DNA of 63,971 nt from Octopus bimaculoides. Lineage: Eukaryota. The stretch is from the NCBI RefSeq assembly GCF_001194135.2, contig NC_068995.1, positions 4,071,056 through 4,135,026 of the forward strand, read 5' to 3'. The notes below the pieces were generated by a model. The model saw nothing but the letters and a program-made list of their open reading frames with translations, was not told the origin of the DNA and ran no database searches. Shown one piece after another: positions 376 to 5,699 of this stretch. The translations under genes were made by a program, and so were the position numbers. How positions within the stretch are numbered: position 1 is the stretch's first letter; the number at the start of each line of letters is the position of its first letter.

Positions 376-3300
376 CTGGAGCAGCCATTTTACTTGGATT
401 TCTCGACGTTGCTTCATTATGGCGTCGTGCGATTAGATGAGGTTTTATATGTCTTAAGAAATTACATTTTGGCATATCTGGTGCTAATGAAATACTCCGC
501 ATAGTACTCGTCTTCCCTGAGCTACTCCCTACATCAGGAGTAGAGCTCGCTTCTTTTACATACTCCATATACTCGTGGGTAGAGGGCCGTGACGGAGGGA
601 TTTCTTTCCATGTCATAGTCCCTCCTGGGGCACTATAGTTATGTGTACTTAGCTGCGGAGTGCTCTCAGGTGTGCTATTATTTTCTTTCAGAGTATTCTC
701 CAAAGTACTCACTGATGTATTACATATTGGTGTCTTTGGCAGTGATGTTGTACTCTTTGATGTATGATACTCCTGTGTAGTTTGTGGTAATACAGAACTC
801 CTTGATGTAATATATTCTGCTATAGTTGTCTCTAATGTTGTACTCTTTGGAGTATTGACTTCTAAAATAGTAGACTGTGGTGTGGTGCTCTTCAGAGTAC
901 CTCGTTCTGATATAACCGGCTCGTTTTTAGTGGTTATAGCTATATTACTTTCTGGACTCGTTTGTTTGGGTAGAGTACTCCTTACAGTGTTACCATCAGA
1001 TGTACTTGACTGTCGTACACTGCTCCTTTCCTCGTTGGTTTCTTGTGGCTGTGTAATCTTGAATGAAATACAATCAGGAGGTTTTGGTTGCGTAACAATA
1101 CTCATTGCAGTATCATATTCTATTGTAGATTGACGTGGTACATATTCAGGAGTAGTTGGCTGCAGTGTAACGGCTGTCATCATAATACTCTCTGAGGTAA
1201 GAAAAGTTGCAGGATTAGATTTTATTATGGTCCTATCAGGAGTATTAACTTCAGATTTAGTGGGCTGTGTTGTAGAACTTTCTGCTGGGGTACCCAGTGG
1301 AGTACCACAACCTGGAGTATTTGAGTGCATTGAACTTTCAGTTGTGATACTCTCTGGAGTAGTATAGGCTGCTGTAGTTAGTTGTGTTGGAAAACTTACA
1401 GTTGTGGTACTCTCAGGAGTATTATAATCTGTAGATGAATGTGTGACAGAATTTGTTGCTGGAGTGCTCTCTGGAGTATCACAATTTAGCGTAGTTGGCT
1501 GTGTTGTAGAACTCTCTGATATGATGCTCTCTGGAGTATTATACTCAGTAGAGGTCTGTGTGGCAGAAAATTCTGTTGTGGTACTCTCTGGAGTATCGCA
1601 ATTAGGTGTATGTTGCTGTGTTGTAGTAAATTCTGTTGTGGCACTCGTTGGGGTTTTGAAGTCTGAGACATTTGGCTGCGTTGCAGAAAGATCTCTTGCG
1701 GAACTCACTGGATTATTACAATCTGTTGATGATAGTGTTGTAGAACTTTCTGCTGTGGTACTACCTGGGATATCAGAATTTGGTGTAAAAGGTTCTGTCA
1801 GAGAAGCACTTGCTGCGATACACTCTGGGGTACTACAGTCTGATGTTGTTAGCTGGGCTGCAAGAATTTCTGTTGCGGTATTCTCAGGAGTAGATAGTTG
1901 TGTGGGAGAACTTGCTTTTGTGATACATTCTGGAGTGTCACAGTTTGGTGTAGATGACTGTGTTGTAGAAACTTCTGTTGTGGTACACACTGAATCATTA
2001 CAATCTGTTGGTGGTTGCGTTGTGGAAATTTCTTTTGCGGTACTCTCGGCAATATTACAATCTGCTGATGATTGTGTTGTAGAAATGTCTCCTGTGATTA
2101 TCTCTGGAGTATTAGAATCTGTTGATGGTTGGGTTCTGGAAATTTCTGCTGTGGTAATGTCTGGATTAGAATCTGTTGATAGTTGTGTTGTTGGAAATAC
2201 TGTTGTGGCACTATCTGGAATATTACTACCAGATGATGGTTGTGTTGTATGTACTTCTGTTGTGGTACACCCTGGAGTATTGCAAACTGTTGATGGTTGT
2301 GCTTCAGGACTTTCTGTTGTGGTACTGTACGGAGTATTAGAATCTGTTGTAGAAATTTTTGTTGTGGTACTGTCTGGAGTACTAGAATCTGTTGATGGTT
2401 GTGTTGTAGACATTTCTGTTGTGGTACTGTATGGAGTATGAGACTCCGTTGATGGTTGTGTTGTAAACATTTCTGTTATGCTACTGCTTGGAGTATTAGA
2501 ATCTGTTGATGGTTGTGTTGTAGCATTTTCTGTTGTGGTACTGTATGGAGTATGAGACTCCGTTGATGGTTGTGTTGTAAACGTTTCTGTTATGCTACTG
2601 CTNNNNNNNNNNTTCTGTTATGCTACTGCTTGGAGTATTAGAATCTGTTGATGGTTGTGTTGTAGCAATTTCTGTTGTGGTACTGTATGGAGTATGAGAC
2701 TCCGTTGATGGTTGTGTTGTAAACGTTTCTGTTATGCTACTGCTTGGAGTATTAGAATCTGTTGATGGTTGTGTTGTAGCAATTTCTGTTGTGGTACTGT
2801 GTGGTGTATTAGAGTCTGTCGATGGCTGTGTTGTAGGAATTTCTATTGTGGTTCTCTCTGGAGTATTACAACCTGATGATTGCTGTGTCGTAAAAATTTC
2901 TGCTGTGGTACTGTATGGAGTATAAGAATCTGTTGATGATTGTGTTGTAAAGAATTCTGTTGTGGTAATGTTTGGAGTATTAGAATCCGTTGATGGTTGT
3001 GTTGTAGTAATTTCTGTTGTGGTACTGCCTGGAGTATTAGAATTTGTTGATGGTTGTGTTGTAAATACTTCTATTGTGGTAATGTTTGGAGTATTAGAAT
3101 CCGTTGATGGTTGTGTTGTAGAAACTTCTCTTGTTCTTTCTGGATTATTACAATTTGTTGATGGTTCTTTTGTAGAACTCACTGTGGTATCACAAGTTGG
3201 TGTAGCTGGATGTTTAGTAGGGCTTTCTGCGGTGGTGCTCTCTGGAACATTGTACTCAGTAGATGGTTGTATGGCAGACGTTCCTGTTCTGATCCGCTCT

Positions 3301-4587
3301 GGAATATCACAATTTGATGTAGTTGGCTGTATTGTTGGAGCCTCTGTTCTGGTGCTTTCTCGATGATCACAATTTGGTGTAATAGACCGTGTTGTAGAAA
3401 TCTCTGTTGTGATACTCTGTGGAGTATCAGAATTTGGTGCATTTCTTTGTGCTGTATAAAATTCTGTTGCGGTACTCTCTGGAGCATTATAGCTAGCTGT
3501 AATTGGTTCTGTTGTAGAATTTTCCTTTGTGGTACTCTCTGATGTATTACAAACTCTTGATGGCTGTGTAGTAGAAATTTCTGGTGTGGTACTCTCTGGA
3601 GTATAACTATCTGTGGATAGCTCTATTGTAGAACTCTCTGGCGTATCACAATTTGGTGTAGCTGGGTTTGTAGTAGAACTGTCTGTTGTGGTACTCTTTG
3701 GAATATCACAATTTGATGTTGCTGTATATGTTGTAGAACTTACTGTTATGGTACTCTCTGGAGTATTAGCCTCACTAAACGTCTGTGTGGCAGAACTCTC
3801 TGTTGTGGTGCTCTGCGGAATGTCATAATTTGGTGTAGTCGGTTGTGTTGTAAAACTTCCTGTTGTGATACTCTCTAGAGTATTACAGTCTGGTGTAGTT
3901 TGCCCTGTTGTAGAAACCTCTGTTGTGGTACCCTCTTCAATTCTACAGTCTGGTGTAGTTGGCTCTGTAGTAGAACTTTCTGTTGGGATACTATCTTGAG
4001 TATCATCATTTCGTGTAGTTGGCTGTCTTGTAGAACTAACTGTCGTGGTACTCTGTAGAGTACTATAATCTTGTACAGATGGCATTTTTGTGGCACGTTC
4101 CACAATACCACTCTTCGAATGATTACAGTCTGGTACAGTTGGTTGTGTCTTAGAAGCCTCTATCATTGTAGTCTGGCCAATATCATTACTGCTGGCAATA
4201 GCAAATGTCAGTTGCCGTCTTTCTCCCAATGTATCGTCTGTTGTTGTTCCATGATGTTTTGTTGTATACTCCGACAACGAGGACAAAGAACCTTCACTGG
4301 GTGGCTTTTCCATTCGATATTCTTTTGCATCAACATTTTTCCGATGACTACTAAAAGTCTTCAACGCTTCCACATCTATAAAGTTAAACCCAAAGAGTCG
4401 TCGTATGAGTTCTCGAACTCCCTTAATTTGTTCCCACTGGTGTTGTGGTTTGCGTTGTCTATCGCTTGTTTTATGCCGACCACTCTTTTGATGTTTAATG
4501 AGGTTAATTAGAGATCTTTCATCAATACCACTGACATTTCTGCCGATACATCGGCCTCTATGACGAAATCGGACCGGTGAATCAGAT
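376..4587 (-). CDS. Giant internal exon (~1,394 codons after gap closure): end of Kazal domain (SDSPVRFRHRGRC), basic linker and Thr/Ser/Pro-rich mucin-like repeat tract
   Basis: Acceptor ttacttgttttaaacag| at 4589/4588 with an in-frame TAA upstream in AT-rich intron. The frame is open 214 nt upstream of the ORF-track start at 4373. ORFs 2595-4373 and 239-2470 join in one frame when the 18-nt duplicate flanking the N10 gap is merged. Candidate donor CCAG|GTTTGT at 376/375 (phase 1); 4184 nt = 1+1394x3+1. The 3' boundary is inferred. Confidence 0.85.
2290..3120 (-). repeat. Coding 57-bp (19-aa) minisatellite core xxTTQPSTDSNTPxSTTTE, with an alternating 114-bp higher-order dimer around the gap
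   Basis: Unit gttgatggttgtgttgtagacatttctgttgtggtactgtatggagtatgagactcc is 57 nt; ESHTPYSTTTE and DSNTPSSSITE units alternate. Confidence 0.9.
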
Positions 4588-4829
4588 CTGTTTAAAACAA
4601 GTAATAATTACATGTGTAAATATATGTAATGATGTTATTTATTATTATAATTAATTATTATAAGTATAATTATTCAATTAATCATCATATATATATTATA
4701 ATTATTTATTTTAATCATTATGATTAATAATGTTAATGTGGCGATCAGGCTGAATCTTCATCATGGCGGAAGAATTGCTGCGAAGCTTTTTCGCGCCTCT
4801 TTATATACCAAATCGAAAATTACTCTTAG

Positions 4830-5290
4830 ATCGAGTTTACCTTTTATCTTTTCGGAAACGATAAAATGAGTACCAGTTGAACACTGGGGTTGATATAATC
4901 TATTAACCATCAAAACCCTGATGGTCTTGTGCCTAAATTCGTTATTAATAAACGCAGTGAATTGACAGAACCGTTTGCGCGTCGAGCAAAAATGCTTTGC
5001 CGTATTTCTTCCGGCGCTTTATGTTCTGAGTTCAATTTCCGTCGGTGCTTACTTCGCCTTTCGTTCTCTTGGGGTTGATAAAATAAGTATCAGTTGAGCA
5101 CTAGAGTCGATGTAATTGAATAAATGCTTCCTGCCTAATTTCATACTCTTTACCAAAATTTGAAACGAATATTAACGGTCAAAATAAGGCGGTGAGCTGG
5201 TAGAATCGTTACAGCGCCTGACAAAATACTTAGCGGCACTTTTCGTGGTTTTAAGTTCTCTGGGGGTTGGTTAAAAATAAATACTAGCCC
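4830..5290 (+). mobile_element. Cluster of three degenerate SINE family A copies (3' fragment, near-full copy 4953-5172, 5' fragment 5187-5290)
   Basis: Motifs ggcggtgagctggtagaatcgtta, gttctgagttcaa and ggggttgataaaataagta recur in many copies across the window. Confidence 0.7.
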
Positions 5291-5585
5291 ACACTACCTA
5301 CAAATTTCAAGCTTTACATCGATCGTGGAAAGAATTTTACTGGTCAAAATATTATTGACATCCGATTTTATTATATTAACGAAATGATTTACGTATACGG
5401 AATCTTTTAAATCGATTTGAGAACAGTAAATTTTTGTGTTGTATCTAAAATAGTTTTGCAAAGGGACGCTGAAAGAGTGTTAGTAACAAAAAGGATGGGG
5501 TTGAGTTAGTTGGAAAAGGTTTGAGAAGCATTTCATAAGTACAAAGACTTGTGCAGATGTTAGAAATAAACATATCAAAACTTAC

Positions 5586-5699
5586 AAGCAACCGGCTCTA
5601 TTCAGGAAGCATTCGTTGGTGTAGGTCACACCGTTCGAACCACAAACCTCACGACGCCTAGGATTACATATTTCAGGACATTGCAGTGTTCTTCCATTA
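5586..5699 (-). CDS. Kazal-domain exon: NGRTLQCPEICNPRRREVCGSNGVTYTNECFLNRAGC
   Basis: Acceptor gtgccttacag|, donor TT|GTAAGT, 114 nt, phase 2 to phase 2. Canonical Kazal motif C-x3-C-x7-CGSNGxTYxNEC-x6-C. It splices in frame (TT|A = Leu) to the 4587 exon, which supplies the sixth Cys (RFRHRGRC). Confidence 0.95.

What the first reader, a model, noticed from the sequence alone, without database searches (positions are those of the whole stretch)
376..5699. Kazal domain fused directly to a ~1,200-aa mucin tract, mostly carried on one 4.2-kb exon
Seen: a clean Kazal exon (5699-5586, CAG/GTAAGT) splices in phase 2 onto a giant exon that completes the domain (CPEICNPRRREVCGSNGVTYTNECFLNRAGC-L-SDSPVRFRHRGRC). 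The exon then runs ~1,390 codons, mostly T/S/P repeats. The ORF track shows only two disconnected halves and no Kazal. Known: gel-forming mucins use vWD/C8/TIL/CTCK ends and membrane mucins use SEA/EGF, whereas Kazal arrays with S/T regions occur in agrin. Inference: this is a lineage-specific Kazal-mucin, possibly a skin, egg-jelly or sucker secretion component. Whether it has been described I cannot tell.
Basis: partly seen in the sequence, partly recalled or inferred. Interest (0 to 1): 0.7.

Follow-up and report, generated by a model that had tools for sequence, protein, structure and literature searches.

The report
Octopus secreted Kazal-headed orphan mucin gene
This stretch of the Octopus bimaculoides genome holds a three-exon gene for a probably secreted protein with a small Kazal (protease-inhibitor-type) head and a roughly 1,200-residue sugar-carrying mucin tract; it is real, but it is an ordinary kind of lineage-specific mucin rather than a new kind of system.

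Summary
On the minus strand, a Kazal exon ending at 5586 (GTAAGT) joins the giant exon at 4587 in phase 2. The spliced peptide matches Pfam Kazal_2 over the whole profile (E 1.6e-11, 44.6 bits against a 22.8 cut-off).

The N gap at 2603-2612 lies inside a 57/114-nt tandem repeat. Both flanks end on codon boundaries, share an exact 18-nt overlap and are in repeat register. The frame is therefore continuous; only the copy number is unknown.

- A signal-peptide exon sits at 8450-8402. It is in frame only with an acceptor at 5710/5709, not 5700/5699.
- A 131-residue basic non-repeat linker separates the Kazal domain from the mucin tract, so the fusion is not direct.
- The 3' end is unresolved: a weak donor at 376, or read-through to the stop at 239 with a hydrophobic tail.

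The window is Octopus bimaculoides GCA_001194135.2. That record splits the gene at the gap into a 732-aa and a 743-aa model.

My best reading is an orphan secreted mucin, made when a three-exon single-Kazal gene gained a PTS minisatellite in its last exon. Expression, orthologues and tissue could not be tested. Interest is modest.

The parts
8402..8450 (-). Exon 1. ATG plus MKASCQCILVFAVLVV and one extra base; this is the hydrophobic core of the signal peptide. Donor G|GTAAGT, followed by a phase-1 intron.
   Evidence: Sequence read. Hydropathy reaches 3.77 and the donor scores 9.0 bits on my own rough matrix. The database gene model starts at 8450.
5710..8401 (-). Intron 1 (phase 1). It contains SINE-like copies and a foldback element of about 280 nt.
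5586..5709 (-). Exon 2 (124 nt). It encodes the end of the signal peptide (VPYSNG), the likely cleavage site, and Kazal Cys1 to Cys5. Acceptor TTTTTTCCCCTAATTAG|TG, donor CTT|GTAAGT.
Evidence: It is also the only choice that reproduces the 732-aa database model. Kazal_2 hit.
4588..5585 (-). Intron 2 (phase 2), between Kazal Cys5 and Cys6. It contains a SINE-like element.
4548..4587 (-). Start of the giant exon 3. It encodes (L)SDSPVRFRHRGRC and so completes the Kazal domain with Cys6.
4155..4547 (-). Basic non-repeat linker, 131 aa, pI 9.7. No Pfam domain, no detectable homologue, and no confident predicted fold.
611..4154 (-). PTS (mucin-type) tract of about 1,178 aa as assembled. About 50 units of 19-20 aa with consensus TPESTTTEISTTQPSTDSN / ...TPNCD. 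It is acidic (pI 4.2) and holds about 25 isolated cysteines.
2603..2612 (.). Assembly gap inside the youngest part of the repeat array (80-84 % identical units). The frame is continuous across it; the copy number is unknown.
380..610 (-). C-terminal non-repeat basic region, 77 aa, pI 9.8.
239..379 (-). Unresolved 3' end. Either the exon ends at the candidate donor CAG|GTTTGT (376/375), or it reads through a (TTG/ATG)n-like stretch. Read-through gives PGLYSEV-LMLLLMMMMLVMLVLCLILFLLMA-QNIVVEVVLVEDLVE and the stop at 241-239.
   Evidence: The database's 743-aa model uses the stop at 239.

Best explanation
This is a real protein-coding gene of Octopus bimaculoides with three coding exons. It encodes, in order:
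- a signal peptide;
- one non-classical (invertebrate-type) Kazal domain;
- a 131-aa basic linker;
- an acidic PTS tandem-repeat tract of at least about 1,180 aa;
- a short basic C-terminal region.

How it works (inferred):
- The protein enters the secretory pathway.
- The PTS tract is densely O-GalNAc-glycosylated and becomes an extended, hydrated 'bottle-brush'. That makes the protein a secreted orphan mucin, serving as lubricant, barrier or adhesive.
- The isolated cysteines spaced along the repeats, and the basic ends facing an acidic tract, would let molecules cross-link without the vWD/CTCK domains of classical gel-forming mucins.
- The Kazal head either tethers an inhibitor-like or binding module in the mucus, or is a leftover of the gene's origin. 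Its reactive-site position P1 is Pro and is followed by Arg-Arg-Arg. Canonical serine-protease inhibition is therefore doubtful.

Origin (inferred): a small three-exon secreted single-Kazal gene gained a 57-nt PTS minisatellite in its last exon. This is 'mucinization' in the sense of Pajic et al. 2022.
For: Shown:
- Splice structure and a full-length Kazal domain across the junction.
- A signal-peptide-like exon in frame through a phase-1 intron.
- The database model of 732 aa spanning 8450..2476 is reproduced by exactly one GT-AG combination: 8450-8402 + 5709-5586 + 4587-2627 + 2540-2476.
- The ORF is open for about 1,400 codons although the repeat units differ at 16-20 % of sites. With 3.45 % of possible substitutions being nonsense, 10 % divergence predicts about 14.5 stops, so P(0) is about 5e-7.
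- Length differences between units visible in the translation are whole codons, as the uninterrupted frame requires.
- PTS composition and tandem repeats.
- No other domain.
- The repeat occurs nowhere else in the window or in the 10 kb downstream, so it is not a dispersed element.
- The charge pattern is basic, acidic, basic.

From the literature:
- Mucins are defined by function, and orphan mucins arise when secreted proteins gain exonic PTS repeats (PMC9417175).
- Molluscan single-Kazal genes (conkazal, schistosomin) have a phase-1 intron right after the signal sequence and a phase-2 intron before the last core cysteine (PMC13101452). The phases here are the same.
- O-linked GalNAc has been found on an octopus protein (PMC6272458).

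From my own knowledge: human SPINK1 intron 3 is also phase 2 and lies between Cys5 and Cys6.
Against: - No transcript, proteomic or cross-species evidence could be obtained, so neither expression nor the splice junctions are shown.
- Differences between repeat units show no third-codon-position excess (0.19/0.20/0.16). Selection is visible only as the absence of stops and frameshifts.
- The 3' end is unresolved.
- An in-frame ATG lies upstream at 8522, so the true start is not certain.
- P1 = Pro argues against a working inhibitor.
- Cysteine cross-linking and electrostatic association are inferences only.
Confidence: 0.66

Rival explanations
1. Membrane-tethered mucin. Exon 3 is not spliced at 376 but reads through to the stop at 239. 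The 24-residue hydrophobic stretch LMLLLMMMMLVMLVLCLILFLLMA then anchors the Kazal-mucin ectodomain in the cell surface, as a type I transmembrane helix or a GPI-type signal.
For: - The ORF stays open for 45 codons past the candidate donor.
- Hydropathy of the stretch reaches 3.26.
- The database's own 743-aa model ends at this stop.
- The donor at 376 is weak: 5.0 bits against 9.0 and 7.3 for the other two donors.
- No convincing downstream exon was found in 9.9 kb.
Against: - The DNA is a degenerate TTG/ATG/GTT microsatellite, typical of non-coding sequence. It stays open in one frame of three by composition alone.
- No basic residues follow the hydrophobic stretch. The tail is acidic (5 D+E, 0 K+R), while the preceding region is basic, which is the reverse of the positive-inside rule.
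- Sixteen residues follow the hydrophobic run, which is atypical for a GPI signal.
- No SEA domain.
Confidence: 0.2
2. Not a functional gene. A decaying or never-expressed Kazal gene lies next to an expanded minisatellite that happens to stay open, or the arrangement is an assembly artefact of a fragmented region (14 gaps in the window).
For: - No expression or orthologue evidence is available.
- There is no third-position excess among repeat units.
- The assembly is gap-rich.
Against: - No stops where about 14-29 are expected after the observed divergence, and no frameshifts.
- All six Kazal cysteines and the GSNGxTY core are intact.
- A consensus donor at exon 1 and good sites at intron 2, with phases matching other molluscan Kazal genes.
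- The two gap flanks are in repeat register.
Confidence: 0.08
3. The exons are the 3' part of a larger multi-domain gene, such as an agrin-like, follistatin-like or testican-like proteoglycan, whose other exons lie upstream.
For: - Agrin is the top PDB hit in summed score, with nine Kazal/FS modules each matching.
- Agrin has S/T-rich regions (established knowledge).
Against: - A motif (regex) scan of six frames over 64 kb found only one Kazal pattern.
- No other coding-looking ORF lies upstream.
- A signal-peptide exon with an ATG splices in frame directly onto the Kazal exon.
- The best single-domain match is a free inhibitor (1y1b, 48.8 bits), well above any single agrin module (at most 26.8 bits).
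- The intron inside the domain is of the inhibitor type.
- No SEA, EGF or LamG domains.
Confidence: 0.03

Closest known systems
Orphan / lineage-specific secreted mucins (e.g. MUC7, rodent Muc10 derived from PROL1; Pajic et al. 2022, PMC9417175)
   Same: A signal peptide, a short non-repeat part, and a long exonic PTS tandem-repeat array carried on one exon. There are no vWD/CTCK or SEA domains. The repeats are young and probably vary in copy number. The proposed origin is a non-mucin secreted protein gaining repeats.
   Different: The precursor here is a Kazal-domain gene, not a proline-rich SCPP gene. The tract is much longer (about 1,180 aa). It also carries regularly recurring single cysteines, which PTS domains usually lack.
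Toxocara canis TES mucins, with mucin domains flanked by six-cysteine (ShK/SXC) modules (Loukas et al. 2000, cited in PMC7333891); frog integumentary mucins with trefoil modules (own knowledge)
   Same: The architecture is a small disulfide-rich toxin- or inhibitor-type module joined to a secreted S/T-rich O-glycosylated tract.
   Different: The module type differs (Kazal against ShK or trefoil). There is one head only, the tract is far longer, and there is no sequence relationship.
Non-classical single-domain Kazal inhibitors: sea-anemone elastase inhibitor AEI (PDB 1y1b) and molluscan conkazal/schistosomin genes (PMC13101452)
   Same: - CPxIC...CGSxGxTY...C...C spacing.
- A 46-residue end-to-end alignment to AEI (E 5e-12).
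- Pro after Cys1.
- Gene structure with a phase-1 intron after the signal peptide and a phase-2 intron before the last core cysteine.
   Different: - P1 is Pro (Met in AEI, Glu in conkazal/schistosomin), and the loop is NPRRREV.
- There are six cysteines, not eight.
- The last exon runs on for about 1,400 codons instead of stopping after the domain.
Agrin
   Same: Kazal/follistatin-type modules combined with S/T-rich, O-glycosylated regions in a secreted protein.
   Different: Agrin has nine FS/Kazal modules, laminin-EGF, SEA, EGF and LamG domains, with one module per exon. This gene has a single Kazal module split by an intron and none of the other domains.

Membership tests
Kazal domain (Pfam PF07648 / PF00050; MEROPS I1) | Six cysteines in Kazal spacing, with a profile score above the curated cut-off | tested here: met
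   Kazal_2 matches at 1-48 of 48 with 44.6 bits (cut-off 22.8). Kazal_1 scores 32.6 bits (cut-off 21). There are 69 PDB Kazal/FS matches.
Kazal domain (Pfam PF07648 / PF00050; MEROPS I1) | Canonical reactive-site loop, with P1 two residues after Cys2 and suited to a serine protease | tested here: inconclusive
   Alignment to AEI, together with the known Kazal rule that P1 lies two residues after Cys2 (as in rhodniin; own knowledge), gives the loop C-N-P(P1)-R-R-R-E-V-C. P1 = Pro and the usual P2 Thr/Pro, P2' Tyr and P4' Pro are missing. This is atypical but not proof of inactivity.
Kazal domain (Pfam PF07648 / PF00050; MEROPS I1) | Inhibits a serine protease | not testable with these tools
   This needs the recombinant head and enzyme assays.
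Mucin (functional class: secreted PTS-repeat glycoprotein) | Long domain rich in Ser/Thr (>= 40 %) and Pro (>= 5 %) | tested here: met
   Residues 203-1204 have S+T 42-45 % and P 9-10 %. Residues 1237-1380 have S+T 38 % and P 7.6 %.
Mucin (functional class: secreted PTS-repeat glycoprotein) | Exonic tandem repeats | tested here: met
   57/60-nt units with 114-120-nt super-units, about 50 units.
Mucin (functional class: secreted PTS-repeat glycoprotein) | Secretory signal peptide | tested here: met
   MK, a 15-residue hydrophobic core (hydropathy up to 3.77), then PYSNG with small residues at -3 and -1 before Arg23. No dedicated predictor was available. An upstream in-frame ATG at 8522 leaves the start uncertain.
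Mucin (functional class: secreted PTS-repeat glycoprotein) | Dense O-glycosylation of the tract | not testable with these tools
   The only support is that octopus proteins can carry O-GalNAc (PMC6272458).
Gel-forming mucins (MUC2/5AC/5B/6 type) | vWD-C8-TIL assemblies and a C-terminal cystine knot | tested here: not met
   The Pfam scan of both halves at E <= 1 found only Kazal, plus an insignificant Claudin_2 hit on the hydrophobic tail.
Transmembrane mucins (MUC1/4/13/16 type) | SEA or NIDO/AMOP/vWD-EGF module next to the membrane | tested here: not met
   No such Pfam hit.
Transmembrane mucins (MUC1/4/13/16 type) | Transmembrane helix plus cytoplasmic tail | tested here: inconclusive
   A hydrophobic 24-mer exists only if the donor at 376 is not used. 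The flanking charges are the reverse of the positive-inside rule.
Agrin | Array of follistatin/Kazal modules with laminin-EGF, SEA, EGF and LamG domains | tested here: not met
   A motif (regex) scan found one Kazal pattern in 64 kb. No other domains were found. A signal-peptide exon lies directly upstream.
Conkazal / schistosomin (molluscan eight-Cys Kazal peptides) | Eight conserved cysteines and Glu at P1 | tested here: not met
   There are six cysteines, and the next Cys is 141 residues further on. P1 is Pro. No schistosomin/conkazal-named chain is among the 60 best PDB matches.
Conkazal / schistosomin (molluscan eight-Cys Kazal peptides) | Phase-1 intron after the signal sequence and a phase-2 intron near the end of the Kazal core | tested here: met
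   Intron 1 is phase 1 and intron 2 is phase 2, between Cys5 and Cys6. Compared with PMC13101452. Exact positional homology of the second intron was not checked on an alignment.

The most novel reading that the evidence does not exclude
This would be a cephalopod-specific way to build a mucus gel. The mucin would polymerise without any vWD or cystine-knot domain. Instead it would use single cysteines spaced at about 20-residue multiples inside the PTS repeats, and basic end-pieces binding the acidic glycosylated brush. It would carry a built-in, non-canonical Kazal head (P1 Pro, RRR loop) that blocks or binds a specific microbial or prey protease. The gene would have been born recently by repeat gain in the last exon of a Kazal inhibitor gene.
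Probability: 0.12. Interest if true: 0.55.

Novelty: new variant of a known kind. Interest (0 to 1): 0.33.

Why it matters
If expressed, this would be a clean invertebrate example of how mucins arise again and again: a small secreted disulfide-rich protein gains a PTS minisatellite in its last exon. It would extend the 'mucinization' idea beyond mammals and beyond proline-rich precursors.

It would also give a candidate structural component of octopus mucus. A long tract with periodic cysteines is a testable alternative to vWD-based gel formation.

Anyone cataloguing cephalopod mucins or Kazal proteins should correct this.

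Tried and rejected
1. Three word-indexed protein searches found nothing: Kazal plus linker, the second half of the tract plus the C-terminus, and the Kazal domain alone at E <= 10.
2. An exhaustive HMMER search of 1.84 billion representatives with the linker gave one hit, P0001. This is a GC-rich repeat protein with a summed repeat score and is not a homologue.
3. These negatives are not evidence for lineage restriction. Neither the 743-aa ORF nor the reconstructed 732-aa model is in the collection.
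5. An AlphaFold2 single-sequence model of the linker had pLDDT 45.7 and was uninformative, so no fold search was run.
6. It does not reproduce the database model, so I rejected it as the main form.
7. A search for further exons in the 9.9 kb downstream found only low-complexity ORFs.
8. A search for more Kazal motifs in all six frames found none.
9. Five literature searches for a Kazal-mucin in cephalopods or elsewhere found no described case.
10. No R-X-[KR]-R furin site was seen by eye in the head or linker. Release of the Kazal head by a convertase is therefore not proposed.

Full report
**Source.** An exact look-up of the 743-aa ORF at 239-2470 places the window on Octopus bimaculoides assembly GCA_001194135.2, chromosome CM046615.1, at about 4.06-4.08 Mb. 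The fetched locus L001 is identical to the window where they overlap. It also extends 9.7 kb beyond window position 1, which itself abuts another gap. The window has 14 N gaps.

**The observation.** The features below are on the minus strand.
- The exon ending at 5586 has the donor CTT|GTAAGT. The giant exon starts at 4587 after TTTTAAACAG.
- The join is phase 2 (TT|A = Leu). It gives CPEICNPRRREVCGSNGVTYTNECFLNRAGC-L-SDSPVRFRHRGRC.
- Pfam Kazal_2 matches this over the whole profile, 1-48 of 48 (E 1.6e-11, 44.6 bits, cut-off 22.8). Kazal_1 also passes its cut-off. The sixth cysteine lies in the giant exon, so a complete domain exists only after this splice. That is the strongest available support for the junction.
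- Against solved structures, the best single-domain match is the sea-anemone elastase inhibitor AEI (1y1b), aligned end to end over 46 residues (E 5e-12). Agrin and follistatin modules match more weakly per module.

**The gap.**
- The 1,975 nt from 4587 to 2613 end exactly on a codon (...SSSITE). The 2,227 nt from 2602 to 376 begin exactly on a codon in the only open frame (SSSITETF...).
- The two flanks share an exact 18-nt overlap. The first 120 nt after the gap match the sequence 114 nt earlier with one mismatch.
- Tandem Repeats Finder reports 57-nt and 114-nt periods on both sides.
- The gap therefore lies inside the youngest repeats. Any whole number of units, or a plain overlap, keeps the frame. 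The two ORFs of the track are one exon. The copy number, and hence the protein length, is a lower-bound estimate.

**Is the reading frame more than chance?**
- The sense frame has no stop in about 1,400 codons. The other five frames have 8-64 stops per half. Base composition predicts about 79 stops.
- Because the tract is repetitive, the fairer test is what divergence should have done. The regular units differ at 16-20 % of sites, and 3.45 % of possible substitutions in this frame are nonsense. Even 10 % divergence predicts about 14.5 stops, so P(0) is about 5e-7.
- Unit lengths in the translation vary from 14 to 25 residues, and the frame is never broken.
- There is no third-position excess (0.19/0.20/0.16). 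This fits selection on composition and openness rather than on exact sequence, as expected for PTS repeats.
- The repeat's 16-mers occur nowhere else in the window or in the downstream 10 kb, so it is not a dispersed element.

**The 5' end.**
- The database holds a 732-aa model spanning window 8450..2476.
- At 8450 there is ATG AAA GCC ... GTT GTT G|GTAAGT, encoding MKASCQCILVFAVLVV plus one base.
- From this strong donor (8402), the single leftover base is in frame with the Kazal exon only if the acceptor is TTTTTTCCCCTAATTAG|TG at 5710/5709.
- I enumerated all GT-AG choices that start at 8450, end at 2476, total 732 codons and contain no internal stop. Exactly one solution exists: 8450-8402, 5709-5586, 4587-2627, 2540-2476.
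- The public model therefore uses the same first three boundaries. It then jumps the gap with an artificial 86-nt intron into a wrong frame and stops at 2476. A second model of 743 aa covers 2470-239.
- The N-terminus looks like a signal peptide: Lys2, a 15-residue hydrophobic core, and Ser and Gly at -3 and -1 before Arg23. No dedicated predictor was available.
- An in-frame ATG at 8522, inside a TATAAT-like motif, leaves the start slightly uncertain.

**Body of the protein**.
- Kazal domain, residues 23-71, pI 9.25.
- Non-repeat linker, residues 72-202, pI 9.7. It has no Pfam hit, no homologue among 1.84 billion representatives, and no confident fold (pLDDT 45.7).
- PTS tract, residues about 203-1380. 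S+T is 42-45 % and P is 9-10 %. It has 135 acidic against 45 basic residues (pI 4.2).
- The tract has about 50 units of 19-20 aa, typified by TPESTTTEISTTQPSTDSN. The older, more diverged units at both ends often read ...TPNCD/TPDCN. This gives about 25 isolated cysteines, often spaced at roughly 20-residue multiples. The young central units have Ser at that position.
- A basic 77-aa C-terminal region, pI 9.8.
- No vWD, C8, TIL, CTCK, SEA or EGF domain was detected.

**The 3' end is unresolved.**
- Read-through adds 46 residues, including the very hydrophobic 24-mer LMLLLMMMMLVMLVLCLILFLLMA, before the stop at 239. But this DNA is a degenerate TTG/ATG microsatellite, no basic residues follow the hydrophobic run, and the flanking charges are the reverse of the positive-inside rule.
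- No convincing exon lies in the 9.9 kb downstream. There the next called gene begins with its own signal-peptide-like start, MKIGSTLYLFVILAVLVWG.

**Interpretation.**
- By the functional definition of mucins (PTS-rich exonic repeats in a secreted protein; PMC9417175), this is an orphan mucin with a Kazal head.
- The gene structure is that of a small inhibitor-type Kazal gene, not of agrin or follistatin. It has a phase-1 intron right after the signal sequence and a phase-2 intron between Cys5 and Cys6.
- The same phases are reported for molluscan conkazal and schistosomin genes (PMC13101452). From my own knowledge, human SPINK1 has a phase-2 intron at the corresponding place.
- In such genes the last exon ends a few codons after the last cysteine. 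Here it runs on for about 1,400 codons. The most economical origin is gain and expansion of a 57-nt minisatellite in the last exon of a single-Kazal gene. This is inferred and not shown, because no paralogue or orthologue could be retrieved.
- Alignment to AEI, together with the known Kazal rule that P1 lies two residues after Cys2 (as in rhodniin; own knowledge), puts Pro at P1, followed by Arg-Arg-Arg. Classical protease inhibition is therefore doubtful, and the head may be a binding module or a relic.
- Dense O-glycosylation is inferred from composition and from the presence of O-GalNAc in octopus (PMC6272458).
- Cysteine cross-linking and electrostatic association of the basic ends with the acidic brush are hypotheses.

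**What is known.**
- Five full-text searches found no described Kazal-mucin in cephalopods or elsewhere.
- Architectural analogues exist: Toxocara mucins with six-cysteine ShK modules (cited in PMC7333891), trefoil-bearing frog skin mucins (own knowledge), and mammalian orphan mucins.
- I therefore rate this a new variant of a known kind. It is of modest interest until expression and tissue are known.

**Limits.**
- The protein collections lack this assembly's own models. The empty homology searches therefore cannot show lineage restriction.
- No cephalopod transcriptomes or other cephalopod genomes were reachable with the tools.

Noticed in passing
window 5917-6198 (intron 1): A near-perfect foldback. 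The arms 5917-6054 and 6063-6198 are 95-99 % complementary with an 8-nt loop. It looks like a MITE-like or hairpin element.
   Followed up: partly
window 5023, 8108, 8292, 8633, 8868, 15416, 15546, 27746, 27883, 30288, 57406: Eleven copies, on both strands, of a SINE-like element sharing the core GTTCTGAGTTCAAATTCCGCC. Several bracket exon 1 and one lies in intron 2.
   Followed up: partly
L001 22102-22232 (about 9.9 kb beyond window position 1, same strand): The next called gene (164-aa product, running off the locus) starts with a signal-peptide-like MKIGSTLYLFVILAVLVWG. It may be another small secreted protein, possibly a relative. It could not be fetched further.
   Followed up: no
window 2476-2627 and 2470: The public gene models are mis-split at the 10-N gap. 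The 732-aa model bridges the gap with an artificial 86-nt intron (2626-2541). It ends in a frameshifted tail, IPQQKMLQHNHQQILILQAVA. A separate 743-aa model starts at the next ATG.
   Followed up: yes
window 8520-8527: An in-frame upstream ATG at 8522 is embedded in TATAAT. If this is a TATA box, the ATG would lie outside the transcript. If it is transcribed, it would add 24 residues before the signal peptide.
   Followed up: no
window 611-4154 (protein residues 212-1343): Isolated cysteines recur inside the PTS repeats in the context TP[ND]C[DN], often 20, 40 or 60 residues apart. The youngest central units have Ser instead. This is unusual for a mucin tract.
   Followed up: partly
window 1443-2441 (+ strand): A 332-aa antisense ORF, along with other antisense ORFs, is a by-product of the repeat periodicity and not a gene. 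The antisense frames carry 8-64 stops per half overall.
   Followed up: yes
whole window: There are 14 assembly gaps in 64 kb. The left end of the window abuts a further gap (L001 12471-12558). No other coding-looking ORF was found in the remaining 58 kb.
   Followed up: partly
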